A stretch of 63,338 bases of DNA, filler included, from Octopus bimaculoides (GCF_001194135.2; 5 parts of 5 records of this genome joined end to end with filler, not necessarily neighbours in it); one strand, 5' to 3'. Shown: positions 14,496 to 35,983, counted from the first letter of the whole stretch. A program made the numbers and translations. The notes: generated by a model not told the origin, from the letters alone.

Positions 14496-17400
14496 CTTAT
14501 AAAGGAGATGGGGGGATGTACTTCTTTTCACCGCATGAATTCATATTTCCTATATATCAATTGTGATTTGCTTTTTTTAATATATGTATATATATTTAAA
14601 CAATGACCAGCATTTTAAAACTATCAATATCCTCAAGTTTGTATAGATAAGATGTATATATTCATTTAATATCTTTCATATGTATATACTGTCTGCATCG
14701 CATCACTTCATGGTTCTGTTTCTACTCATAAATATACATATATATATATTTGTAAATATAGACATTTTAATTCCATACTTATATGTAATTTCATATTGAT
14801 AAGTTATATTTTTTATATATAAATTTATAATGTCCCAACTTGTAAATAAATTTACATTGTATGTATATTATGTAAATATATATATTAATTTCATGATTTT
14901 ATGTATGAATTTATATCTGTAAATAATGATGGATATTTTGACAGAACATAAATATTTACACACAGTGTTTTAATTGATAAATTTTATTTTTCACATATAT
15001 CTTTAGAACTGTTTTAACTCATGAATGTTTTACACCCCTATATATATATATGTATATGTGTGTGTGTCTATGTATGTATATCTATAAAATTCTCCTTTTA
15101 ATGTTTTAATATGCATTAAAATGCATTTACATTTGTAAATATCAACAGACATTTCAATATTCTTTTTTATATATATATTTTTATGTAAGAATAAAGTATA
15201 TTTTAGTATATGTTTCACCTTGTAAATAAGCTTTACCAATCAGTTAAATAAAACATTATTTTTCAAATAATATCTTTGTTTGTTTTTATATATTTCTTCA
15301 AATTTATTTTTCTTGGTTAAATGTTCAAGTGTATAAAGGGAGTCTGAAAACTGATGCTTTTCACTAAATCTGTTGGTAGTAGAGCAGGAAATGATTTGAA
15401 ATCATTACATACAGACACTGACTCAAACATCCACAAACACAGACATTTATATGCGATGGACTTCATCACAGTTTCTACCTACCAGTTTCTCTCATAACAC
15501 ATTGATCAGTCCATAGCTATAGCAAAAGACATTTACCAAAGGTACCATGCAATGCCATTGAACCTTGAACCATGTCCTGCAAAGGGTGCTTCTTATCTCA
15601 TCCAACCATGCCTCCACCTATTGGTCTTAGTAAGAAAACAAAATTTCTTGAGCATCAATGAAATATTTTAGTTAAGTCACAGACATTAACAGTCTTTCAT
15701 CAACTCATTCAGAACATCATCACCACCACCATCATCATCGTCATCAGTTAATGAGTTTCTCATGCTTGCTATGTGTGAAAGGGAATTTGCCGAGACATAT
15801 TTTCTATGATTGCATGCTCTTCCTGTCAACAACCTTCACCTGTTGCCAAGTAAAGTAATTCTTCCTCATAACCAGACATTAGTGTCAGGCAAGTCTGGAA
15901 AGAAGCATTCTCACATAGACCCAAAACATCATTTCTTGCCCAAAGGCCGCATTTGCTCTTATATGCATGTTATATATATATATATATATATATTTACCTA
16001 TACAATGAACTTCTTTCTGTTTCCATCTTACAAATCCACTGACTTGGCTTAGAATACCAATTGGCTATGGAAGCAGAGAAATAGCCCATAGTGCCATGCA
16101 CTGGTACTGTACCCAAGACCACATGACTGGGAAGCAAGCTTCTTAACCATGCCTCCACACCTGCTGCTTTACGATACATATTCTACTGACTATAAATGTT
16201 ACTGATTTGTTATGATATCATAAGAAATGTTATCAGATCTTAACAAAAACAATGCAGCTCTGATATTTCTCCTATTTTTACATGTATCAAGAATAAAATT
16301 ATGAAATGTTTCCTGCTCATTAAGTTTATAATGTGAGATGTGATTTGAGGAACATTTAACTGCAATCTCTTGCAGATCATTTGTCCATTAGCTAAATAAT
16401 ATTTTGGTAAGGGGATTGATTTTATAGGAAATATATTTGTAAAAGATGTTAAGTTAGAAAAGTGACAGCGTTTTGCTATAATTGTTAAAATATGTTAAGG
16501 AAGAGTGGATTTATTCTATGATGATCAGAAATAATCTAATTGGATAAATTGAACAGAACTGGAGAACATTGATTCAATGGTTAATAAGATTTTAATCATT
16601 TCAAAACATGGGAGATAACTGCAAGCATCTTTCAATCGTATTAGATTTCTTTAGTGAAACATAGATTCCGCTGCAGATGCTGGAGCATTTCTTAAGGGAA
16701 TCTCTAAATAAAATTTATGTAACCTGAGTAGACTTAGAAAAGGTGTGTAATATATAAAAATCAATATGTCGCATGGGTTGCTGTTGATTTTTCTGTATTT
16801 TAACATATTGTAACAACCATAATTTTATATTGTTCAGATATAATAATGATTTAGTTTATTGTAAGAAAACTGATGCAATATTGTTAGTATTTTTAATATG
16901 ATGAGTGCAAACTCCTCTACATGGAAAAGTTTGCATATGTGAAAGTTTTATCGGAGTTATTTCCCGTATAACCCAGTGCTGGCAGAATCGTTAGCACTCC
17001 GGGCAAAATGCTTAGCAGTATTTCACCCGTCTTTACGTCCGGAGTTCAAATTCTGACACAGTCGACTTTGCTTTACATCCTTTTGGGGATTGATAAGAAA
17101 AGGAACCATTTGAGCACTCGGTTAATGTAATCGATTTATCCTTTTCTTCGATGTTGCTTGCCTTGTGCCAAATTTGAAACCGATATATATGATCGATAGA
17201 ATCACGGACATTCATGTGTTCTACAGTCCATTTCAAAAACTGATATATTACTTTCTATATATCAAGTCTTTATTTTATCCGTTACATTGCTGTTCTCTTT
17301 TGTTGTTGTAATTCTCATAACTTTTCTGCAAGTATGCAACTCAAATATGATAAAATATAAATTGGCTTCGACTAAAATCAGAAAATGAATTCTTGAAATT

Positions 17401-18440: not shown

Positions 18441-19013
18441 NNNNNNNNNNNNNNNNNNNNNNNNNNNNNNNNNNNNNNNNNNNNNNNNNNNNNNNNNNNN
18501 NNNNNNNNNNNNNNNNNNNNNNNNNNNNNNNNNNNNNNNNNNNNNNNNNNNNNNNNNNNNNNNNNNNNNNNNNNNNNNNNNNNNNNNNNNNNNNNNNNNN
18601 NNNNNNNNNNNNNNNNNNNNNNNNNNNNNNNNNNNNNNNNNNNNNNNNNNNNNNNNNNNNNNNNNNNNNNNNNNNNNNNNNNNNNNNNNNNNNNNNNNNN
18701 NNNNNNNNNNNNNNNNNNNNNNNNNNNNNNNNNNNNNNNNNNNNNNNNNNNNNNNNNNNNNNNNNNNNNNNNNNNNNNNNNNNNNNNNNNNNNNNNNNNN
18801 NNNNNNNNNNNNNNNNNNNNNNNNNNNNNNNNNNNNNNNNNNNNNNNNNNNNNNNNNNNNNNNNNNNNNNNNNNNNNNNNNNNNNNNNNNNNNNNNNNNN
18901 NNNNNNNNNNNNNNNNNNNNNNNNNNNNNNNNNNNNNNNNNNNNNNNNNNNNNNNNNNNNNNNNNNNNNNNNNNNNNNNNNNNNNNNNNNNNNNNNNNNN
19001 NNNNNNNNNNNNN

Positions 19014-19046
<33 letters not shown>

Positions 19047-21184
19047 CCTGTAATGATAAAATGATAAAAATAACCCGTGAAAGGACAGAAGAACTCAAAA
19101 TGCTTGTGTTGATTAACTCCCGAAGTAAATGCTTTGTATTATTATATTTACTTGACTCTCTGGTTTCAAATCCTCTGGTTTCAAATGCTATCAGGATTAT
19201 CTTTGCCTTTTATGCTTCATGTCCTCGATCCTAAATCCCGAAATATTTGTAAATTATTGGGCACCTGTTATCATTCTTTTACTTTTCCTGGTGAAAAAAT
19301 TTTGTTTGAAACGGCGAAGCTGTTTCTTTTACAGTTTATGCGTTAAACTGATATAGAACTTGTTCCTTCTGTGTTGTCTTCTTTTTGGGCTCATTGTCTA
19401 CCATAACTGACTACATATCTATTTCTTTATCTAAATGTTTATTTCTATGTAACACCTGAGGTTGTAGAACCAGCGACCTCAGGTGTTACCTCAGGTGACT
19501 CTTTTCGCAACAAAATCAAGGAATGCGTCTGCGAAAAGTTTATCGATTTCAACTGTCGAACAATAAAGAACAGATTAGGAAGACCTTTCTTGGAAGAGAC
19601 CAAAATACCTCAACTGAACCGAAAGAATAAAAGGAGTTTTTGAGAAGTTCGAACCTAACATGTCTACCTACCGAGACTATCTCATTTTAGAAATTATTTC
19701 TATGCTTTTATCAAAGTTTTCAAATTTAACAATAACGTTCTCTGAACAATATATATTTTACTATTTATAGGTTATTATTCATTGTTTATCTGATTCGAGA
19801 TCCAGCGTTCCAAATTTTAAAAAAATTACTTTTTATCGTTTGGGGAGTGATAATGAACCGGTCATGAACTGGGGTCGATTTTTCTCTTTTAGAATAATTT
19901 ATGGTCTGTAGTGAGAGGGGCCGCAAGGCATCACTCGTAGAACTCTTTCTTTAGAAACGAAGTAGGATTTATTCAGAGGTACGTTGTTGGAATCACTCGT
20001 GGACGGATCGATGGACAGGAGAAGGCAGAACAGAAATATAGGGCAATATTTTATTGGTACTTGAAGGATTAGCGCTAAAGTCCACCACGTTATGATCTGA
20101 ACTCAGAACAAAACAATGTAACTCAGATAATAAGCGTAAATATGTAAACAATTTAATCTTCCGGATAAACGAAATTTATATATTAATTGTGAAGAAAATT
20201 CTAAAAATGTTTCATTGAAAGTTACTCAAAAATAATTATATCTATATGATGACATTGAATAAATCGATAACTTCGATTAATGATGAGAAAATCAGGAAAA
20301 GATAGATTGGTGCTGGTTTTTAGAAGAAGCTGGTTTACATGTTGTCTCGGTCTTCGGAACAAATTTCATGGAAATACTGTTGAAAAAAAAAAGAAACAGA
20401 AGAATTAACAGGTTTTGATGGAAATAACTGTTGAAGAAACGAGATGAAGGATAATGGACAGTTGAGAAATGTGTATTTTGACTTCGGCAGAATTTGAATT
20501 CAGAACGTGAAGATGAACGAAACGCCGCAAAGCATTTTGTCCGCTGTGGTAACGATTCCGCCAGTTCACCGCCTTAAATAATAATAATAATCCTGTCTGC
20601 TATAGGTACAGAGCCTGAAATTATGCAGGAAGGTGGTGGTGTATCTAGTCGATAATATCGATTCCAGTGCTCAACTGGTCCTATTTTACCGATCCCGGGA
20701 AGTTGGAAAACAAAAGAGATCTCAGAACTTGAACTAAGAAAGTTGAGACGTAACTAGATACCACACGGTACTTCGTTCAGCCTTTTACCGTTTCCGATAC
20801 GCCACCACCACCACCACAACAACATCAACAACAGTGAAAAAAACAACAACAATTGTTGAGGATACAAAGTCGAATACCAAACGCTAATCGCACTCTGTTG
20901 TCGACTACTTTGAAACTGAAATAAACGTTGACTCATTCTTTCTCGATCACTAAATCGACATCAAATGGAAAAATATGCTGATCAAAGCAAGAGCCTTAAC
21001 ACGGTCGCTTGACATGCTAGAAAAAGTAGTCAAATTTCCTCAAATCAATACCCACTTACGAGTGACTTGAACATCTAATCCTAGATATACAGAAGAGTGT
21101 GATGGATGTTGGACTTTGTTTAAACAAGATAAGCAAAAACAAACTATAAAGCATTTACTATGGAGAGTAATCTTTCATCCTCAC

Positions 21185-21277
21185 CTGGTTGTCCATAACT
21201 ACAGCATCTTTTAGTTGCCATTCTTCATCTTCTTGGTTGTAGAACTGCATAAAACTCTCCTTACATACGGAACACAT
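21185..21277 (-). CDS. PCF11-like: PCF11-type zinc finger 2 exon (MCSVCKESFMQFYNQEDEEWQLKDAVVMDNQ)
   Basis: Matches the PCF11 second zinc knuckle CxxCxExFxQxxxxExEEWxLKxAV. Acceptor gtattttgcaacag, donor CAG|gtgagg, 93 nt, phase 0/0. Confidence 0.9.
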
Positions 21278-23301
21278 CTGTTGCAAAATACAGGCAAATT
21301 TGCGCTAGAAAATATTTGTAATATCCTGCCAGATTCCGGTTTTTAAAGATTCGTAAATGAAATACAAGAAATACTGAGATAATATAATATAACTGGAGTC
21401 CATAGATTATCTTTACAACTTCCACACTTGCAGACTTCAAATTAATTTATAGATACGCTTTAATATCAAATACATTCTCACTCACATTCATATAAATATA
21501 GAACCTGTAAACTAGGAGACAGACAGACTGACAGAGAGACCTGAAGGAGGGTTGGCGGTAGAGAGAGCATGTCATCGATGAGGTCGCGTTTGGTGACGAA
21601 AGCACTTGACAAACTTAGCTGTTTCATTGATTCGCCGAATTATTAATTAAAGAATCAAGCAATCGATTAATAAATTGGTTGAGTAGTTAACTGGTTAAGT
21701 TATAAAATAGTAGAATAGAACCAATGCCTATGTTTATTATTGGCATAATGATATTCCTCACACACAACATAAACGTTCTTGTGGAGAAATTGTTTCTTTG
21801 CACTGGTAGAAGGGGAAGACTGAAATTTGGTTTGAAGTTATCTGCACATTTTTCTATATGTTCACTGAGAGGAATTTTCCTGTTTTGAGGGAAACGGATT
21901 TGCTCTTTATGTAGAGTGGTTCTCCTTTTCAAGGTGATACTCATCTGTCCAATATAGTTGTGTCCATTTAAATAAAGAAACTTTTTTCATTGAAAAATAC
22001 AGAACACGTCTTAATATGCACGCATAACGAACTTTTATCTTTTTTCATATTTCAATTCACGATTAAATCACAGTACATAAATCTCCTCGCTAAACAAGTT
22101 CTTCGAAACCTTTTTTTTTTTGTGTGTGTTTGTGTACACATATATATTCCCCTCCTCTTACCCGAAAGCTGAACAGTTATCTCTCTTACACACAACAACA
22201 ATAATAACGATAACCAATTACCTCCCCTTATTTTTCTACTTGTGAAGCCATTCATTCGTAAATATCATCACACACAACATGGACAAAAATTTCTTCTTAA
22301 GAAAATACATATTCAAATAAGTAAACCATAATATCATGAATAGTGAAAGTGAAACCGGTTGATATATTAAAAATTCTATTAAAACTATGTAAAGTGTGTG
22401 TATTTTCCTTTTTTTAATTTCTTATATATATTACAACTCACCACGTGGGGATAATCGAAATTCCTCTTTTTCTGTTACTATTANNNNNNNNNNNNNNNNN
22501 NNNNNNNNNNNNNNNNNNNNNNNNNNNNNNNNNNNNNNNNNNNNNNNNNNNNNNNNNNNNNNNNNNNNNNNNNNNNNNNNNNNNNNNNNNNNNNNNNNNN
22601 NNNNNNNNNNNNNNNNNNNNNNNNNNNNNNNNNNNNNNNNNNNNNNNNNNNNNNNNNNNNNNNNNNNNNNNNNNNNNNNNNNNNNNNNNNNNNNNNNNNN
22701 NNNNNNNNNNNNNNNNNNNNNNNNNNNNNNNNNNNNNNNNNATATATATATATATAAGAAAACCGCTTCACAATATCTTTTGTTTCCATTATTATAAATA
22801 TGCATTAGACGGTGAGCACGCAGTATTGTTAACGCACCGGACAAAATGCTTAGCAACATTTCGTCCGTCTTTGTGTTCTGAGCTAAAATTCCGCCTTCCA
22901 TCCTTTCGGGATCGATGAAATATGTATCAGTTGAGTCCTGGGATCAATGTAATCGACTTTACCGCATGCCCCGAACCTGCTGACTTTGTACCAAAATTTG
23001 AAATCCTTATAAATATGCGTATGTATACATACACACATCCACACACTCAATGCACGATTATAAGCGCGACTCATTGGAATTTCTCAGTTCTTTTTCCTAT
23101 TTTGGTGCTTTTATATTTACAAATTTTCATAATAATCTTTCATTTTATCAAAGCTTGCCCTTCTATTATTTTCCATTAAAAAATATTTTGAAGCGTAACA
23201 CTCGAACACATGGACGTCGTAACAGACAGAATATCATACATTATAAAGACCTTTTTGTAAATTGGCATAATCAGGCACCCAAAGAAGTATCATCTACTTA
23301 C

Positions 23302-23393
23302 GTCATTAATACCCGGAATTAACTGGGGCTTTTTAGCAACTTGTTTCTCTTCTGAGTTGATATTTTTGATGCTTCTCTGTTGCTGTTCCTCTG
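23302..23393 (-). CDS. PCF11-like: PCF11-like linker exon between zinc fingers (AEEQQQRSIKNINSEEKQVAKKPQLIPGIND)
   Basis: NAGNAG acceptor (ctattag|cag), strong donor GAC|gtaagt. Phase 1 in and 0 out bridges the two zinc-finger exons exactly. Confidence 0.75.
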
Positions 23394-24176
23394 CTAATAG
23401 TATAAAGATACATAATTATAGGAAGAATGTAACGTGCAGGCTTCCGGATAGTTTTAGCCTACTCATTTTCACTCACAATGTTTGGCTGAATGCGCGAGTA
23501 TGTTAAAAAACACTTAAGTGTCGCACAGTAATATCGAACCCAAATCGTATCGATTTTGAATTGAATCTTCTAGTGATTTAGTCATGCCTGTGTCCGTACA
23601 GAGATGTATGCGCAAAATACACCATAAATTTGCATATATATATATGCATATACGCGCATAGAGATAATTATACAGTCTTACATACACTCCACACGTACAG
23701 CATACATGCAAGCCAAGAAAAGACGTAGTTACTCGTCCTGCAAAAATAGTCACTAGATGTCCCTCGCATCACGTAATTGTCTTGAAGGACACTGGATAAC
23801 TTTATGCCGATTTCTTTATATTAAAAACCCCGACAGGATGTTCATGGATGGAATATTTTTGCTGAAGATCTTTTCAGTCGAGACTTACCTGGGGCTAAAC
23901 AGAATAACATGAACAAAAATAACTTTACGTGGTTGCTGGAGCTGCTAGAAATAGCAGATAAATCGCTGTCAAATTGTGTAACCTTGGTTTGCTAGTATGT
24001 TTAGCGAGTCGAAATGACACCTTCGTCGCTCTCACGCTGGCTTCTTACTATTCCCCATACCAACAGGTTTATTAACTTACTAATTCTCAGTATTTCTGCA
24101 ATCTAATATTATCCTACATCTCTTCACTACGAACGTTGTTCTTATCCGCCAGAAAAAAAAAAGAACTATAACATAC

Positions 24177-24355
24177 CAATATTCGGTGCCACGTTCTCGT
24201 ACCAATTCCGACATTTCAGGAACCTTCTCTCTGTCTTCAGCTCATTTTGACGGAAATGTTTATCCATGTGTTCTCTATCAATAACCGAACTTCTTCGACC
24301 ACATGTTGAGCACTGTTTACCGTCATAGAGATTTTCGATCAGCAGGTTTGGGAAC
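24177..24355 (-). CDS. PCF11-like: PCF11-type zinc finger 1 exon (FPNLLIENLYDGKQCSTCGRRSSVIDREHMDKHFRQNELKTERRFLKCRNWYENVAPNI)
   Basis: Matches the PCF11 motif LYxGxQCxxCGxR...HxDxHFRQN...RxWY (CCHH). Acceptor gtgttttag, donor G|gtatgt, phase 2 in and 1 out. Confidence 0.9.
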
Positions 24356-24415
24356 CTAAAACACATCAATGCTGAAATTAAATATTGAAAGAAAAAAAAA
24401 ACGCATTTGGCCAAA

Positions 24416-24446
<31 letters not shown>

Positions 24447-24596
24447 ATGCGCATATGCATACGTGATATGGCAAGTAAGAAGAATAGGAAGCCTGATGTG
24501 TCAATAGGAGTTAGATACATATCACAAAATTCTGATGGTTTGACTTATGAAAGCATATCAAGAAATAATCGCAGATTACAAGAAGTTGTCACCCAC

Positions 24597-24778
24597 ACAG
24601 TGAGACGTTCCTTGTTAAATATTGGTAAAATAGCGTTCATTTTCGCCTCACTTTCTGAAGTGTACATAACCTGAATATTGCAACCAATCTTTAGGCCATT
24701 AATGTCCATTGTTTTATATTCTTGCCAGTTGCTTGGATTTAGCTTCAAGGATTCATCTTTCGGTGGAGTTGTGTCTTT
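24597..24778 (-). CDS. PCF11-like: PCF11-like exon (KDTTPPKDESLKLNPSNW...NAILPIFNKERLT)
   Basis: Acceptor ggtttccag (phase 0), donor GT|gtgggt (phase 2), open for 60 codons. The end 'LPIFNKERL' resembles PCF11 'PxLxFxxExLK' just before zinc finger 1. Confidence 0.72.
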
Positions 24779-25070
24779 CTGGAAACCACGATAGAAACTG
24801 CAGTTAACGACAAAGTAAAGCGACTGAATATAAAGCTGTATTAAATACATTTATACTTCAACATGAGATACTACATATACAGATACACGTGCACATGTAC
24901 AATATATATCTGAAGCGCTAATTGTAAACTGGAAGCTACTTTGTATAAAGAACTCAAAGTAAGATTTATAGTCTTCTGTGTGTTTGCTTAATATTTTCAT
25001 TTTAAATGTATTCAGAAGGTATTTATTGTCTCTTCATATATAAAACGATTACATCGATCCTGTATTCGTA

Positions 25071-25132
<62 letters not shown>

Positions 25133-25905
25133 TTGTGTGTGTGTGTGCGCGCGCGCGCGTGTGCGTGTATAGATATATACTCCCTGCTTAAATGATTAAC
25201 AATTTTTAGTTTAAAGGTGAAAGACGAGGTGAATAGTTTAGATGTTTTGTGAGGTAATTTGGGGGTACATAGTCCCTATTTTCTTTGTGTTTGTTTAATT
25301 CATGTCTGCATAAATAAATCAACACCAGAAGCTAGCTGTTTAGTCGTTATTCGCTCTTAGGGATTAGATATTTCATTTTAGCTGAAATAAGGTTGTATTC
25401 CCTTGGCTCGTGTCAGTGTAACTACTATATATGCATTTAACACCCCACACTAAATTCCCCTCGTTATACACACTAAAGGAAGAATTCACTATCTTTCTAA
25501 AACAGTTCTTGTTCCTCGTTGCGACCGCTCGGCCCTTTATCTATTCCTGGTCGACTTTTACACCAACGGTTATACCGTATATAGCTAATCGTCTTTCGTT
25601 CAGCACCGGATGACGAGGTGAACAGTCATCGAAATTTCTAGATGTCCTGTGGTACAAAATGAGAAATATTTCCTAATCTTTAGTGAAGTATATTTGAGAT
25701 AGGAAGAAAAAGTACCGGAAGGGAGAAAATCTATGGAAAACCTCCTTCATATTACACAAAAACAATGATGGCTGCGGAAATAATTCATCACAGAGTAAGC
25801 TCTTTCCCGCTCTTGTCTGTTTTTAATCATTAGATTCGTGAGCACTAGAGGACAACCGGGACCTAAATCAACTTCTTATCATTCAATCAAATATGGATAC
25901 CATAC

Positions 25906-26018
25906 CTTAAAATCTAGCTCTGGTTCTTCAATTGCTTCCTCTGTCACACCTGACGACACTGTTTCACTTGAGATAAATCCCGGCTTAAGTAGATTTCCAT
26001 AGACTTCTGATGGTTCAA
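25906..26018 (-). CDS. PCF11-like: PCF11-like exon (IEPSEVYGNLLKPGFISSETVSSGVTEEAIEEPELDFK)
   Basis: Acceptor tatatgtttcag, donor AAG|gtatgg, phase 1 in and 0 out. Resembles the PCF11 'xDxxELFxKLLxxGII...acidic...PxLxF' segment that precedes the zinc fingers. Confidence 0.78.
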
Positions 26019-26119
26019 CTGAAACATATACATATATATATATATATATGTATCACTATCGAACCAAGAATTTAACTACGGTCTATGCACCCACACACGC
26101 ATACACATACATACATACA

Positions 26120-26165
<46 letters not shown>

Positions 26166-26501
26166 AACATGTATAATATATGTATAGACATACATACATA
26201 TACGTGTATTTTTTACTTTCATTCAAGATCATTTTGTGCCATAGCAGTTAAATTCTTGTCCTTTTTATTTGAACGTCAGATCTAATATTGCTTATACTTT
26301 TAAAATTTTATCAGTAAATACTTTCACAAAACTTTTGATAGATATAACCTTAAAGTAAGTTACAGCTGCACAAATAAATTCGCCTCTTCAACAGCTATTC
26401 ATGTTCCGTGACTTAATCGTAAATCCTTACAATTTCGAAAATAAGACAAAATAAGTACTACCACACTAGTGCTTTCATGATCAGCTATACATCGTACTTA
26501 C

Positions 26502-27571
26502 TCATATCTTTGGCACATGGGAAGTTCTCATGGGTGGGTTCTACCCATTTATTTAATGGAATACAATCGTTTTCCACCGAATATTCTGTCGGTACATTCG
26601 TTTTCGTATCGTGAACTGAAGTAATGTTGTAATACGGTTCTTGCTGTTCCAGTAATAGCTGTTGGATGCTTTCAGTATTATAGGAATTGGTCTGTGAATT
26701 CTGATTTATATTCGATGCAGAAAAAGGATAAGGTTTGTTCGATGAAAAATGTTCTTTGACCTTGCTTTTATACGATCGACATAAGTTTGAAGTTTTATAA
26801 ATATCATGGTTGTAGATATCATATAAGGATGGATGTTGTACATAGTTTTGATAGAATATATGGTTATGTAACGACCCAGACTTTAGTTGGTATCGTTGTT
26901 TATGATGCTGCTGATGTTGCTGTTGGCTATTGTGGTGGTTGTGGTGATGGTGGTGGTGATGATGGTGCTGTGATTGTTGATGACGCCTCTTTTGAGGATA
27001 CCCTTGTGCATGGTGCAGCATATAATGTTGCGCCGGCATAGAAGTGTTATAATCAGAAGATTTCTCATAAAAGCTAGTATCTGTAGAAAAGGTTTGCAGG
27101 ATGCCGTGATTTGGTAAAATCTGTGGCAATAAGCATCTGTAATTGCTATCTTGATTGTGATCTTTATTAAACTGAGGGACTTCATTATTGCTGTCGCCCG
27201 AGAAAAAACAAGATTTGGTATTTTGCTGTTGCTTTAAAGATGACATCTTTTCGGAGGGATAAAAAAATGGTGACTGTTTTTGTCGCTGCAGCAAACTGTA
27301 CTCCTGTTTGTCTTCGTATTGTTTATCATTTATATTTGCTTGTTTCTTTGTCTTAGGGGAGAGTATATTCTGTAGATGTTTGCTACATTCCGCCGTTAAG
27401 TACTCTTCAACAGGATAAGGTTTCAAGTGATGCTTTTCAGCAATTTTCGTGGCTCTCTTCAAACCATTTTGCTCTTTAAAATTCACAGCATTTTTAGATT
27501 GAAAGGATGCGCTTCTTGTATGCATAACATTCTTCCTGTTGGTGTTACAATTATCCATCTCTTGGATTATT
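26502..27571 (-). CDS. Large low-complexity (His/Gln/Asn/Ser-rich) internal exon of PCF11-like gene
   Basis: The 357-aa ORF 26485-27558 is the only long non-microsatellite ORF. Acceptor ttattttcctcgtag precedes 27571 and donor ATGA|gtaagt follows 26502, before the ORF stop. 1070 nt = 1+356 codons+1. Confidence 0.85.
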
Positions 27572-27740
27572 CTACGAGGAAAATAACACCTTATTAATTA
27601 ATCATCACATTTTAAAATAACGAAAGAGTAACACAAACATCACAATCTTCAGACGGAGATTTAATCTTCTACGATCCGTGTTTGTCTCGCACCATCAAAA
27701 TATTTACCTTTCGGCTTCCTAAATTTGATATAATATTTAC

Positions 27741-27909
27741 TTTTGTTGCTGCTTGATCCCTGATGAGTCTCTGTTGAAAAGTTCCAGCCATGATGTATAT
27801 CTAGGATGACGGTTCAAAGCGTCTTTCCATGTAACGCAGAATGAGACAATTTGGTGCAGCTGTTTAGGCACAAATGATTTGGCACGACTGACTGGATATT
27901 CAGCCTGTT
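27741..27909 (-). CDS. Candidate upstream coding exon of PCF11-like gene ((x)QAEYPVSRAKSFVPKQLHQIVSFCVTWKDALNRHPRYTSWLELFNRDSSGIKQQQ)
   Basis: Acceptor cctttcaccag, donor AA|gtaaat. The 169 nt are open (2+55 codons+2). The phase-2 end joins the phase-2 start of the 27571 exon across a 169-nt intron. No homology recognised for this peptide. Confidence 0.6.
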
Positions 27910-28013
27910 CTGGTGAAAGGACGTTTTGTTACTGATTGCAAACAATCCTCCTCCACAAATGCACGCGCACGTGCACACACGCACGCGCGCGCGCACACAC
28001 ATACACACACACA

Positions 28014-30340: not shown

Positions 30341-31644
30341 TGCATACATACATACATACATACATACATACATACATAGAAACGTTTATAATTATGAACA
30401 AGTCACAATTATAACGAAGAGGGTTAAAAGACACATGTTTAAAATATGAGTGATATAATGGCTTTATAGCTGTTTTGGTTGCTATTTTTAACATGTAAGG
30501 ATTTTTAACCTTCTTAGTTATAATTGTGACTTGTTCGTAATTATAAACGTTTTTCTTATATATNNNNNNNNNNNNNNNNNNNNNNNNNNNNNNNNNNNNN
30601 NNNNNNNNNNNNNNNNNNNNNNNNNNNNNNNNNNNNNNNNNNNNNNNNNNNNNNNNNNNNNNNNNNNNNNNNNATATATATATATATATATATATAAATC
30701 CAATATCGGCAAAAGTTAACACTACAAATACCAGAGCAGCACAAAAGTGCAGCTTGTGCTGCAGCAGAAACACGCATGCAACTTGAAAGCATGATGATAA
30801 TAAATCAATTTTAAAATAACATACTTTTTCAGTTGGTGTTAATATCCTTTGAAATAATTCGAGAAACTACTTCTTCGGATATGTTGAGATCGATAGGAAA
30901 TTTTAACTAGAAATTTTGATGACTTCATATGCAAGAAATGACGTCATCGAAATGTTTCGTGGAATAAAATCTATTTTTGTGAGCAATCACAACATTTCTG
31001 GCGAAATGAATTTGTATTTAATCAAATAATATTGTCGCAGTTTTTGTTTAGCTTCAGATCAATCTTGATTGAACAGATGTTTGATGAAAGGTCTTACGGA
31101 GATGAACACCTAGGTTTTTAGGGATTTATAACAATATCTTATTTTATATAGTCTTTGATGGGTTTTTTTTTTTAAGACTGAAGAATGAAAATTGTTGCCA
31201 TATCTTACAGGCTGAACAATTTCGTAGAATCTTTGTCGCTAGATTCTTATTTAAACAGAAGCATAACAACGGTTGAAACAGAGTTGTTGACATCTTGAGT
31301 TCATCGCTTTTATCATATTGAGTGTCTGCTCAACTCATTAGAAATCCCAACCAAATCACTCTCAACTCATATCCTTTACTATTAAAAATTGAATACATCT
31401 TAAGAAGTTGAGTAGAATACATTAAATCTGAATGAACAGAAATAATAGCACGCGCTACTCTTTAGTTGTTACCTCCCTTTACGTTCCGAGTTCATTCCCC
31501 ATCGAAGTTATTTTTGCTGTTTATCTCTCCACGGTCGATGAAGTAAGTCGAAACTAAGTGTTCGGGCTTCATTAAATTGTTTTCCCGGTCCCTGCTTTGT
31601 ATTTTGTTGCAATGTTACAAAAAAAAAGAGAAAAAACACCACGA

Positions 31645-33978: not shown

Positions 33979-34640
33979 NNNNNNNNNNNNNNNNNNNNNN
34001 NNNNNNNNNNNNNNNNNNNNNNNNNNNNNNNNNNNNNNNNNNNNNNNNNNNNNNNNNNNNNNNNNNNNNNNNNNNNNNNNNNNNNNNNNNNNNNNNNNNN
34101 NNNNNNNNNNNNNNNNNNNNNNNNNNNNNNNNNNNNNNNNNNNNNNNNNNNNNNNNNNNNNNNNNNNNNNNNNNNNNNNNNNNNNNNNNNNNNNNNNNNN
34201 NNNNNNNNNNNNNNNNNNNNNNNNNNNNNNNNNNNNNNNNNNNNNNNNNNNNNNNNNNNNNNNNNNNNNNNNNNNNNNNNNNNNNNNNNNNNNNNNNNNN
34301 NNNNNNNNNNNNNNNNNNNNNNNNNNNNNNNNNNNNNNNNNNNNNNNNNNNNNNNNNNNNNNNNNNNNNNNNNNNNNNNNNNNNNNNNNNNNNNNNNNNN
34401 NNNNNNNNNNNNNNNNNNNNNNNNNNNNNNNNNNNNNNNNNNNNNNNNNNNNNNNNNNNNNNNNNNNNNNNNNNNNNNNNNNNNNNNNNNNNNNNNNNNN
34501 NNNNNNNNNNNNNNNNNNNNNNNNNNNNNNNNNNNNNNNNNNNNNNNNNNNNNNNNNNNNNNNNNNNNNNNNNNNNNNNNNNNNNNNNNNNNNNNNNNNN
34601 NNNNNATGTCTCTATATGCACACGCGCCTATATATACGTA

Positions 34641-35630: not shown

Positions 35631-35744
35631 GATCGAATAATCACAATCTATATAAATATATATCAGCATACATTATATATAAATACATATATGTATACAT
35701 ACATACATATATACATACATATATATATTGTTTTATTGTTTTAT

Positions 35745-35930
35745 TTGTTTTAGTCATTTGACTGCGGCCATGTTGGAGCATCGCCTTTAGTCGAGCAAAT
35801 CGACCCCCATGATTCTTTCTTTGTAAGCCTAGTACTTATTCTATCGGTCTGTTTTGCCGAACCGCTAAGTTACGGTGACGTAAACACACCAGCATCAGTT
35901 GTCAAGCGATGGTGGGAAGACAAACACAGT

Positions 35931-35983
<53 letters not shown>

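What the first reader, a model, noticed from the sequence alone, without database searches (positions are those of the whole stretch)
21185..27909. Divergent PCF11-like gene hidden in short exons: a possible lineage-specific paralog of a 3'-end processing/termination factor
Seen in sequence: seven GT-AG exons splice in frame (phases 1-2-1-0-2-1-0-0) to about 632 codons. Established: the CCHH 'LYxGxQCxxCG..HxDxHFRQN..RxWY' and 'CxxCxExF....EEWxLKxA' modules are the PCF11 C-terminal zinc-binding region of cleavage factor II. Here otherwise well-conserved positions differ (HMDKH for HLDWH, GRRS for GxRF, and no DW.. segment after WY). Inference: this is a fast-evolving duplicate rather than canonical PCF11, and could modulate alternative polyadenylation or termination in a tissue-specific way.
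Basis: partly seen in the sequence, partly recalled or inferred. Interest (0 to 1): 0.72.

Follow-up and report, generated by a model that had tools for sequence, protein, structure and literature searches.

The report
Octopus PCF11 zinc-finger-only paralog gene
This is a real, already-annotated octopus gene that keeps only the two-zinc-finger tail of the mRNA 3'-end factor PCF11; it belongs to a tandem gene family so far seen only in octopuses, and its function is untested.

Summary
The PCF11-like exons are real, on the minus strand of an Octopus bimaculoides sequence. Its first exon (27909-27741) is not conserved coding sequence. One donor differs from the annotated model. It missed the terminal exon (20376-20335), which carries the last two zinc ligands. 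The correct CDS has 7 exons from ATG 27558 to stop 20335 and reproduces RefSeq XP_014781154.1 (584 aa) exactly. The assembly gap lies inside a phase-0/phase-0 intron and hides no exon.

The protein has no CID and no central PCF11 region. It has a new low-complexity N-terminus followed by ZnF1, an R-x-W motif and ZnF2. Three introns match the canonical cuttlefish PCF11 gene in position and phase. A 43-nt mini-exon is lost and a 10-nt donor shift keeps the frame. So the gene arose by DNA-level duplication of the 3' half of PCF11. O. vulgaris has at least 5 such genes within about 61 kb. dN/dS is 0.14 over the fingers, so the gene is constrained.

The function is inferred, not shown: a protein that binds RNA and possibly CLP1 but cannot couple to Pol II. 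A canonical octopus PCF11 could not be retrieved by name. Interest is moderate.

The parts
27741..27909 (-).
   Evidence: No in-frame ATG. In O. vulgaris the frame has TAA and TGA, and 98 bp (window about 27811-27714) including the donor at 27741 are absent. The flanking block 27927-27812 is about 96% identical between species.
26502..27571 (-). Exon B: acceptor at 27571, start codon ATG at 27558. Codes for aa 1-352, a His/Gln/Asn/Tyr-rich low-complexity N-terminal region.
   Evidence: tblastn gives 100% to P0001 aa 1-352. The CDS reproduces XP_014781154.1. No Pfam hit and no similarity to canonical PCF11 or to the N-terminus of subfamily 2. dN/dS 0.65.
25906..26018 (-). Exon C (113 nt), acidic linker region
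   Evidence: AG/GT flanks. Conserved with the same splice sites in O. vulgaris L001 13749-13861, although the O. vulgaris gene model omits it.
24597..24778 (-). Exon D (182 nt, ends phase 2): module that precedes ZnF1 (..NWQEYK..GLKIG..AILPIFNKERLTV)
   Evidence: Homologous to the duplicated module of the 448-aa subfamily (E=1e-7). Its 3' intron has the same position and phase as in the cuttlefish PCF11 gene.
24177..24355 (-). Exon E (179 nt, ends phase 1): ZnF1 (C-x2-C-x10-H-x3-H: LYDGKQCSTCGRRSSVIDREHMDKHFRQN) plus the R-x-W motif (CRNWY)
   Evidence: Alignments. All four ligands and R/W are invariant. 4-residue loop deletion. AF2 gives a beta-beta-alpha unit at pLDDT about 72-75. dN/dS 0.12.
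23302..23393 (-). Exon F (89 nt from 23390, or 92 nt from 23393: NAGNAG acceptor giving isoforms X2/X1): inter-finger linker
   Evidence: both isoforms are reproduced exactly. Corresponds to the 116-nt exon of the cuttlefish gene. Predicted disordered.
22484..22741 (.). Assembly gap inside intron F-G
   Evidence: Phase 0 on both sides. F-G joined directly gives the annotated protein. The O. vulgaris counterpart is non-coding.
21185..21277 (-). Exon G (93 nt, phase 0/0): first half of ZnF2 (MCSVCKESFMQFYNQEDEEWQLKDAVVMDNQ)
   Evidence: Pfam PF23228/PF21936. Same length, position and phases as the 93-nt cuttlefish PCF11 exon.
20335..20376 (-). Supplies the His and Cys ligands of ZnF2.
   Evidence: Aligns to yeast Pcf11 'YFHSTCYHE' in 2NAX/5M9Z. 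AF2 pLDDT about 88-91 and Foldseek top hits 5M9Z/2NAX.

Best explanation
The locus is an intact, selectively constrained Octopus bimaculoides gene (RefSeq XP_014781154.1/XP_014781153.1; UniProt 'Pcf11 C-terminal domain-containing protein').

What it encodes: a PCF11-derived protein without the CID. A novel low-complexity N-terminus of about 350 aa is followed by the PCF11 'zinc finger - CLP1 motif - zinc finger' tail.

How it arose (shown): DNA-level duplication of the 3' half of a canonical PCF11 gene, followed by remodelling. A 4-residue deletion shortened the ZnF1 loop. The 43-nt mini-exon encoding the second Trp and acidic segment was lost, and a +10-nt donor shift restored the frame. The protein now ends right after ZnF2. 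The gene then amplified into a tandem family with two subfamilies, at least 5 genes within about 61 kb in O. vulgaris.

How it most likely works (inferred): the two fingers bind RNA, as they do in human PCF11, and the retained R-x-W may still contact CLP1. The protein has no CID, so it cannot dock on the Pol II CTD. It also lacks the central region that human CF II needs for cleavage. It is therefore more likely to modulate or compete with the canonical cleavage factor II, or to act as a stand-alone RNA-binding protein, than to be a working cleavage factor.
For: Identity and gene model:
- The exon set reproduces both RefSeq isoforms exactly. Orthologs exist in O. sinensis and O. vulgaris.

Domains:
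- Pfam Pcf11_C and zf_PCFS4 score above their cut-offs, with no CID, helical or Clp1_ID hit.
- ZnF2 matches yeast Pcf11 2NAX/5M9Z by sequence and by fold (rmsd 1.9 A, prob 1.00).
- Cys/His ligands and R-x-W are invariant across the alignments. R-x-W aligns to yeast R480/W482 (weak, E=0.28). Those residues are needed for Clp1 binding (PMC3273803).

Origin:
- Three intron positions and phases are shared with the Sepia pharaonis PCF11 gene. The mini-exon is lost with a compensating donor shift. The 448-aa subfamily has the same derived structure.

Family:
- Five Pcf11_C genes lie on O. vulgaris OX597821.1 between 70.338 and 70.399 Mb.
- The octopus copies are monophyletic at 72% bootstrap.

Constraint:
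- The 1755-nt ORF has no indels between O. bimaculoides and O. vulgaris, and all splice sites are conserved.
- dN/dS is 0.14 over ZnF1-ZnF2, 0.65 over the N-terminus, and 0.45 overall. dS is 0.12 and intron K is 0.085-0.11.

Mechanism by analogy (PMC6239180):
- The human zcz fragment (aa 1340-1505) binds RNA.
- The human fragment that starts at the first finger (deltaN1339) co-purifies with CLP1.
- Fragments lacking the FEGP region bind both RNA and CLP1 but are inactive in cleavage. The CID is dispensable in vitro.
Against: - There are no expression, junction-read, binding or activity data. The whole functional part is inference from human and yeast PCF11.
- The ZnF1 Cys-His spacing is cut from 14 to 10 residues, and its AF2 confidence is only moderate. 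The finger may have altered or lost its RNA-binding mode.
- The second Trp and acidic segment of the CLP1-interaction region is gone, and Pfam Clp1_ID gives no hit. The canonical cephalopod protein also scores below that model's cut-off, so this test is weak.
- One family member (P0004) reads the 3' part of its ZnF1 exon in another frame, so some copies may be decaying.
- The 90% cluster of this protein contains no transcript-derived (Logan) member. That is compatible with low or restricted expression.
- A canonical Octopus PCF11 was not retrieved.
Confidence: 0.55

Rival explanations
1. A neofunctionalised zinc-finger protein that no longer has anything to do with mRNA 3'-end processing. For example, a general RNA-binding or condensate protein driven by the His/Gln-rich N-terminus, or a ubiquitin-binding UBZ-like finger protein.
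For: - The N-terminal 350 aa is new, of low complexity, and unrelated to PCF11.
- The CLP1 region is truncated.
- Canonical ZnF1 weakly resembles UBZ fingers: TAX1BP1 hits and PF18439 hits.
- The branch separating it from the canonical proteins is very long.
Against: - The R-x-W CLP1-contact residues are invariant in both subfamilies despite about 60% divergence elsewhere.
- Both fingers are under purifying selection.
- The UBZ resemblance is lost, not gained, in the octopus copies.
Confidence: 0.25
2. A non-functional or decaying duplicate, like the probable pseudogenes PCFS1/PCFS5 of Arabidopsis, that annotation pipelines still call as a gene.
For: - CID-less PCF11 copies in Arabidopsis are judged probable pseudogenes (PMC10839035).
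- The family member P0004 looks frame-shifted.
- dN/dS over the N-terminal exon is high (0.65).
- No transcript-derived sequence sits in the protein's cluster.
Against: - A 584-codon ORF is intact in three species, with zero indels over 1755 nt at dS 0.12.
- All 12 splice sites are conserved.
- dN/dS is 0.14 over the fingers, while intron divergence is about 0.09-0.11.
Confidence: 0.1
3. It is the canonical octopus PCF11, with its CID and central exons lying outside the piece or unrecognised.
For: No Octopus-named canonical PCF11 turned up in the protein searches.
Against: - tblastn with four canonical PCF11s, a canonical central-region fragment (P0238) and a CID peptide finds only the ZnF exons, in the 21.5-kb piece and in 58 kb of O. 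vulgaris.
- The 10 kb upstream of the O. vulgaris ortholog has no called gene.
- The upstream frame is closed by stops in O. vulgaris.
- There are at least 5 copies.
- The searches that failed to find an octopus canonical also failed to return proteins known to contain the query.
- Genomic-style contigs of a third canonical cephalopod-type PCF11 with CID exons exist in public reads (L004/L005).
Confidence: 0.03

Closest known systems
Canonical PCF11 (human PCF11; yeast Pcf11; nearest retrieved: Sepia/Acanthosepion pharaonis PCF11 CAE1234847.1 and its gene on CAHIKZ030000709.1)
   Same: - The ZnF1 motif LYxGxQCxxCG..HxDxHFRQN, the R-x-W just after it, and the CCHC ZnF2 CxxCxExF..EEWxL..A....YHxxC.
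- Three intron positions and phases, and the 93-nt ZnF2 exon.
- The ZnF2 fold.
   Different: - No CID, no helical domain, no central region.
- 4-residue shorter ZnF1 loop, and HMDKH instead of HLDWH.
- The mini-exon with the second Trp and acidic stretch is lost.
- The protein ends 7 residues after the last zinc ligand.
- A novel 350-aa low-complexity N-terminus.
- Multi-copy tandem family, 35-40% identity in the shared region.
Engineered human PCF11 C-terminal fragments (zcz, aa 1340-1505; deltaN1339; deltaN1123/deltaN1184) of Schaefer et al. 2018, PMC6239180
   Same: Essentially the same architecture: finger - CLP1 contact - finger without the CID. This is the natural counterpart of a construct known to bind RNA, and the slightly longer deltaN1339 fragment is known to bind CLP1.
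   Different: - Natural, with a shortened linker and a different N-terminal extension.
- The human short fragments are inactive in cleavage. Whether the octopus protein binds RNA or CLP1 at all is untested.
Arabidopsis PCFS1 / PCFS5 (CID-less Pcf11-related genes), PMC10839035
   Same: Lineage-restricted PCF11 relatives that lack the CID and keep the zinc-finger part.
   Different: - The plant genes are intronless, carry frameshifts and nonsense variants, and give mostly non-stop RNAs. They are probable pseudogenes.
- The octopus gene has 6 introns inherited from the parent gene, an intact ORF in three species, and purifying selection on the fingers.
Short 'Pcf11-like' / Pcf11_C-only predicted proteins of insects (Aethina tumida XP_049824330.1, 251 aa; Contarinia nasturtii XP_031625584.1; Henosepilachna vigintioctopunctata KAK9886934.1/KAK9886935.1)
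   Same: Short proteins with both fingers and no CID in Pfam. The ladybird pair shares one contig and one 90% cluster, so it looks like a local duplication.
   Different: - They keep the canonical HLDWH, the 14-residue loop and the DW segment, so they are independent and less remodelled.
- None is characterised. Some may be partial gene models.

Membership tests
PCF11 (cleavage factor II / CF IA subunit), canonical | [quoted passage not shown] | tested here: not met
   No CID hit in P0001, whereas the canonical cephalopod P0169 scores 62 bits. tblastn of canonical proteins and a CID peptide finds no CID exon in the piece or in the O. vulgaris loci.
PCF11 (cleavage factor II / CF IA subunit), canonical | First zinc finger, C-x2-C-x14-H-x3-H with LYxGxQC and HLDWHFRQN | tested here: inconclusive
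   All four ligands plus Y, G, Q, F, R and N are conserved. The spacing is 10 rather than 14, and HMDKH replaces HLDWH. The AF2 beta-beta-alpha unit has only pLDDT 72-75.
PCF11 (cleavage factor II / CF IA subunit), canonical | CLP1-interaction segment between the fingers (yeast R480/W482; PF11526) | tested here: inconclusive
   R-x-W is invariant and aligns to the yeast Clp1-bound fragment, but only at E=0.28. There is no PF11526 hit, and the second Trp and acidic mini-exon are lost. Canonical P0169 also falls below the PF11526 cut-off.
PCF11 (cleavage factor II / CF IA subunit), canonical | C-terminal CCHC zinc finger (PF21936 Pcf11_C / PF23228; structures 2NAX, 5M9Z) | tested here: met
   32.7 and 30.6 bits, both above cut-off. 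PDB E=2e-5, and 1.6e-10 with a profile. Foldseek top hits are 5M9Z and 2NAX.
PCF11 (cleavage factor II / CF IA subunit), canonical | Central region required for cleavage activity (helical domain PF20845; FEGP-type repeats in vertebrates) | tested here: not met
   No Pfam hit. phmmer of aa 1-452 against canonical proteins finds nothing.
PCF11 (cleavage factor II / CF IA subunit), canonical | Common descent with the PCF11 gene (shared intron positions) | tested here: met
   Three introns have identical position and phase, and the ZnF2 exon is 93 nt in both, compared with the Sepia pharaonis gene.
PCF11 (cleavage factor II / CF IA subunit), canonical | Physical binding to CLP1, RNA and the Pol II CTD; activity in cleavage | not testable with these tools
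   Needs biochemistry.
CID-less PCF11-derived paralogs (as Arabidopsis PCFS1/PCFS5) | Lacks the CID but keeps the PCF11 zinc-finger region; lineage-restricted | tested here: met
   (no CID); only octopus sequences occupy the high-scoring tier among 1.84 billion representatives; three Octopus species.
CID-less PCF11-derived paralogs (as Arabidopsis PCFS1/PCFS5) | Intronless, with disabling mutations (pseudogene signature of the plant genes) | tested here: not met
   Six introns, intact ORF, and dN/dS 0.14 on the fingers.

The most novel reading that the evidence does not exclude
Octopuses have evolved and amplified a family of natural 'headless' PCF11 proteins: fingers plus the CLP1 contact, without the Pol II-docking CID or the cleavage-competent centre. 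These act as tunable antagonists or alternative partners of cleavage factor II, and reprogram poly(A)-site choice or termination in particular tissues such as the nervous system or germ line.
Probability: 0.15. Interest if true: 0.75.

Novelty: new variant of a known kind. Interest (0 to 1): 0.45.

Why it matters
PCF11 dosage is a known lever on alternative polyadenylation and termination in animals. Biochemistry has shown that human C-terminal fragments that keep both fingers but lack the FEGP repeats bind RNA and CLP1 yet cannot support cleavage. Here an animal lineage has built that kind of finger-only protein as a gene, kept its fingers under purifying selection, and amplified it in tandem. 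If it binds CLP1 or competes for RNA, it would be a natural regulator of the core 3'-end machinery.

Practical points:
- The RefSeq names ('sex-determining region Y protein', 'myotubularin-related protein') are artefacts of the low-complexity N-terminus and should not be propagated.
- The O. vulgaris model lacks two conserved exons.

Tried and rejected
1. Exon A as coding sequence: rejected. O. vulgaris has stops and a 98-bp absence there.
2. Two shorter donors for exon D (24666 and 24652, with acceptor 24371): rejected once the RefSeq protein showed donor 24597.
3. A shifted frame right after exon G ('KITLHSKCF', which would need a 13-nt intron) as the source of the last zinc ligands: rejected when the true terminal exon was found at 20376-20335.
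4. Placing the octopus clade in a tree: the NJ tree puts it next to a microsporidian, fungi, flatworms and a protist. This is long-branch attraction, so only monophyly of the octopus copies (72%) is usable.
5. P0003 (134 bits) as a relative: it is a chimeric moth model with the canonical C-terminus twice.
6. P0009 (317 aa, shares 'IC.EDRH' after ZnF2) as a possible out-group paralog: it comes from a partly spliced transcript of an unknown organism and keeps the canonical loop and second Trp. Unresolved.
7. Finding a canonical Octopus PCF11 by name: two word-indexed searches failed. The second did not even return proteins that contain the query, so the negative result is uninformative. Run accessions of unnamed contigs gave no paper.
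8. Repeat sharing between the unnamed canonical contigs L004/L005 and the octopus loci, to identify their organism: nothing found.
9. Remnant of the lost mini-exon in intron E-F: none credible.
10. Other ORFs, tRNAs and Rfam families in the piece: none.

Full report
WHAT IS IN THE SEQUENCE. The coding pieces lie on the minus strand. The large protein database then returned a 584-aa Octopus bimaculoides RefSeq protein (P0001 = XP_014781154.1) whose exons match the window at 100%. The window is therefore O. bimaculoides DNA. The exon set 27558-26502, 26018-25906, 24778-24597, 24355-24177, 23390-23302, 21277-21185 and 20376-20335 translates exactly to isoform X2. Using the alternative NAGNAG acceptor at 23393 gives isoform X1, XP_014781153.1.

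- Its first exon (27909-27741) has no start codon. In O. vulgaris that frame is closed by TAA and TGA, and 98 bp including the donor are missing. It is at most 5'UTR, and translation starts at ATG 27558 in the next exon.
- The donor of the fourth piece is 24597.
- A terminal exon (YFHEICSEDRDNM, stop at 20337-20335) was missed. It carries the His and Cys that complete the second zinc finger.

THE GAP. N 22484-22741 sits in the intron between exon F (ends in phase 0) and exon G (starts in phase 0). The direct F-G join gives the annotated protein. The gap-free O. vulgaris locus has the same two exons in the same order, and its corresponding 4.3 kb contain no credible ORF. Nothing coding depends on continuity across the gap.

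WHAT THE PROTEIN IS. Pfam finds Pcf11_C (32.7 bits) and zf_PCFS4 (30.6 bits), both above their cut-offs, and nothing else. There is no CID, no Pcf11 helical domain and no Clp1-interaction model. The second finger aligns to the solved yeast Pcf11 fingers 2NAX and 5M9Z at E=2e-5, and at 1.6e-10 with a profile. An AlphaFold model of aa 389-584 gives that finger pLDDT of about 88-91, and its best structural matches are the same two entries (rmsd 1.9 A over 40 columns). The first finger keeps all four ligands and the flanking LY.G.QC / HF R.N residues, but its loop is four residues shorter (C-x2-C-x10-H against x14) and it reads HMDKH instead of HLDWH. Among 209 two-finger PCF11 sequences, this combination together with the absence of a second Trp occurs only in octopus copies.

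Just after finger 1, an R-x-W (CRNWY) is invariant in every sequence aligned. In a profile search it lines up, weakly (E=0.28), with positions 27 and 29 of the 110-residue yeast fragment crystallised with Clp1. These would be R480 and W482 if the chain starts at residue 454, which I take from memory of that construct. R480 and W482 were shown to be needed for Clp1 binding (PMC3273803). The N-terminal 350 residues are His/Gln/Asn/Tyr-rich. They have no Pfam hit and no similarity to canonical PCF11. Canonical PCF11 queries find only the two finger exons anywhere in the 21.5-kb piece.

A FAMILY, NOT A SINGLE COPY. The whole piece is collinear with O. vulgaris chromosome OX597821.1. That chromosome carries the ortholog (P0002 = CAI9726967.1). 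Its model skips the conserved exons C and D. It also carries a tail-to-tail 448-aa gene 7 kb downstream and three more Pcf11_C genes 25-45 kb further on: two near-identical 448-aa genes in inverted orientation flanking a 202-aa one. That makes at least five genes in about 61 kb, with a 15-kb stretch I did not see. The window ends about 260 bp short of where the first neighbour would begin. O. sinensis has the ortholog too (XP_036361071.1 / XP_036361072.1).

In an exhaustive HMMER scan of 1.84 billion cluster representatives, the gene's own cluster scores 279 bits, the second octopus subfamily 128 bits, and every canonical PCF11 scores 75 bits or less. One 134-bit hit is a chimeric moth model. 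The two subfamilies are each other's nearest relatives, and the five copies are monophyletic in 72% of bootstraps. Beyond that the tree is dominated by long-branch attraction.

HOW IT AROSE. I reconstructed the 3' exons of the canonical Sepia pharaonis PCF11 gene. Three introns have identical position and phase in cuttlefish PCF11 and in the octopus gene. The first lies before finger 1 (phase 2, eight residues upstream of LY). The second lies before finger 2 (phase 0). The third lies inside finger 2 (phase 0), and the finger-2 exon is 93 nt in both. The octopus gene lacks that mini-exon. Its finger-1 exon instead runs 10 nt past the canonical donor position and ends in phase 1, so the frame into the next exon is kept. 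The 448-aa subfamily has the same derived structure. The remodelling therefore preceded the split of the subfamilies. The family comes from a DNA-level duplication of the 3' half of PCF11, not from a retrocopy.

IS IT FUNCTIONAL? Between O. bimaculoides and O. vulgaris, the 1755-nt ORF has no indel and all splice sites are conserved. dS is 0.12, similar to intron divergence of 0.085-0.11. dN/dS is 0.65 for the N-terminal exon, 0.38 for exons C-D and 0.14 for finger 1 to finger 2. That is purifying selection on the finger module and weak constraint on the low-complexity head. It is not the pattern of a pseudogene. One O. vulgaris family member (P0004) does read the end of its finger-1 exon in another frame.

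LIKELY MECHANISM (INFERENCE). For human PCF11, the isolated finger-CLP1 region-finger fragment (aa 1340-1505) binds RNA with a preference for G-rich sequence. A fragment starting at the first finger co-purifies with CLP1. Fragments lacking the FEGP region bind both but are inactive in cleavage, and the CID is dispensable in vitro (PMC6239180). The octopus protein is a natural version of such a fragment, with a shortened linker. The best-supported reading is a protein that binds RNA and possibly CLP1, cannot dock on the Pol II CTD, and probably cannot support cleavage. It would then be a modulator or competitor of cleavage factor II, or a stand-alone RNA-binding protein. I put the identity and origin at about 0.9 and this mechanism at about 0.35.

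LIMITS. I could not retrieve a canonical PCF11 labelled Octopus. The Sepia query returned cuttlefish, unnamed cephalopod-type sequences and other invertebrates. A CID profile query did not even return the proteins it was built from, so the index is lossy and the negative result carries no weight. Unnamed genomic-style contigs carry CID exons of a third canonical cephalopod-type PCF11, 58-61% identical to the other two in the central region. Their organism is unknown. No expression data were available. No paper in the searchable library links PCF11 to octopus or describes an animal PCF11 paralog.

COMPARISON AND NOVELTY. As a gene model with an automatic 'Pcf11 C-terminal domain' label, it is already in the databases. 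The following appear to be undescribed: the corrected structure, the CID-less architecture, the mini-exon loss with frame-restoring donor shift, the tandem octopus family, and the constraint on the fingers. The nearest precedents are the CID-less Arabidopsis PCFS1/PCFS5 and uncharacterised short Pcf11-like proteins in some insects. The Arabidopsis genes are intronless probable pseudogenes (PMC10839035). The insect proteins keep the canonical motifs. I rate it a new variant of a known kind, of moderate interest.

Noticed in passing
window 27812-27927 (and 27714-27811): The non-coding block just upstream of the start exon is about 96% identical between O. bimaculoides and O. vulgaris, higher than the CDS. 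It is followed by a 98-bp stretch present only in O. bimaculoides that contains a short upstream ATG. Probably promoter or 5'UTR.
   Followed up: partly
window 23390/23393: A NAGNAG tandem acceptor (tagCAG|) explains RefSeq isoforms X1 (585 aa, extra Ala) and X2 (584 aa). O. sinensis has the same pair (583/582 aa).
   Followed up: yes
L001 33473-36330; L002 5575-9011, 10001-12015, 16018-19554 (O. vulgaris OX597821.1, 70.36-70.40 Mb): A second subfamily of Pcf11_C genes (448 aa, each with two copies of the exon-D-like module) occurs as near-identical recent duplicates in inverted orientation around a 202-aa copy. The 202-aa model (P0004) reads the 3' part of its ZnF1 exon in a shifted frame, so it is either a decaying copy or a mis-model.
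   Followed up: partly
L001 13749-13861 and 15671-15852: The O. vulgaris gene model CAI9726967.1 (488 aa) omits exons C and D. Both are conserved with intact splice sites, so the true O. vulgaris protein is most likely 584 aa.
   Followed up: yes
window 16982-17053 and 22820-22891; also 35646-35952: Interspersed repeats. A 72-nt SINE-like element is present twice (78% identity), with further copies in O. vulgaris introns. A roughly 300-bp element at the upper end of the piece has two inverted copies inside the O. vulgaris gene's introns (L001 14721-15020, 22687-22950).
   Followed up: no
window 21770-22483: About 700 bp on the low side of the assembly gap have no counterpart in the O. vulgaris locus. 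A 99-aa ORF there has no Pfam hit. Possibly a lineage-specific insertion.
   Followed up: partly
window 18441-19013, 30564-30673, 33979-34605: Three further assembly gaps, all flanked by long (TA)n, (CA)n, (GA)n or (GATA)n microsatellites. These also dominate the introns and inflate ORF and repeat lists.
   Followed up: no
database records (no window coordinates): The RefSeq product names are spurious, low-complexity-driven transfers: 'sex-determining region Y protein' (O. bimaculoides) and 'myotubularin-related protein DDB_G0290005-like' (O. sinensis). UniProt's 'Pcf11 C-terminal domain-containing protein' is the accurate label.
   Followed up: yes
P0025/P0265, P0006, P0021 (insects): Short proteins with both PCF11 fingers and no CID also exist in a ladybird (two 453-aa genes on one contig), a hive beetle and a gall midge. 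Independent CID-less PCF11 duplicates may be recurrent in animals.
   Followed up: partly
L008/L009 (Logan SRR23372229/SRR23372228): P0009 is a 317-aa two-finger protein from an unidentified organism. It shares the 'IC.EDRH' ending with the octopus copies but keeps the canonical finger-1 loop and the second Trp. Its contig looks like a partly spliced transcript. Its relationship to the octopus family is unresolved.
   Followed up: partly
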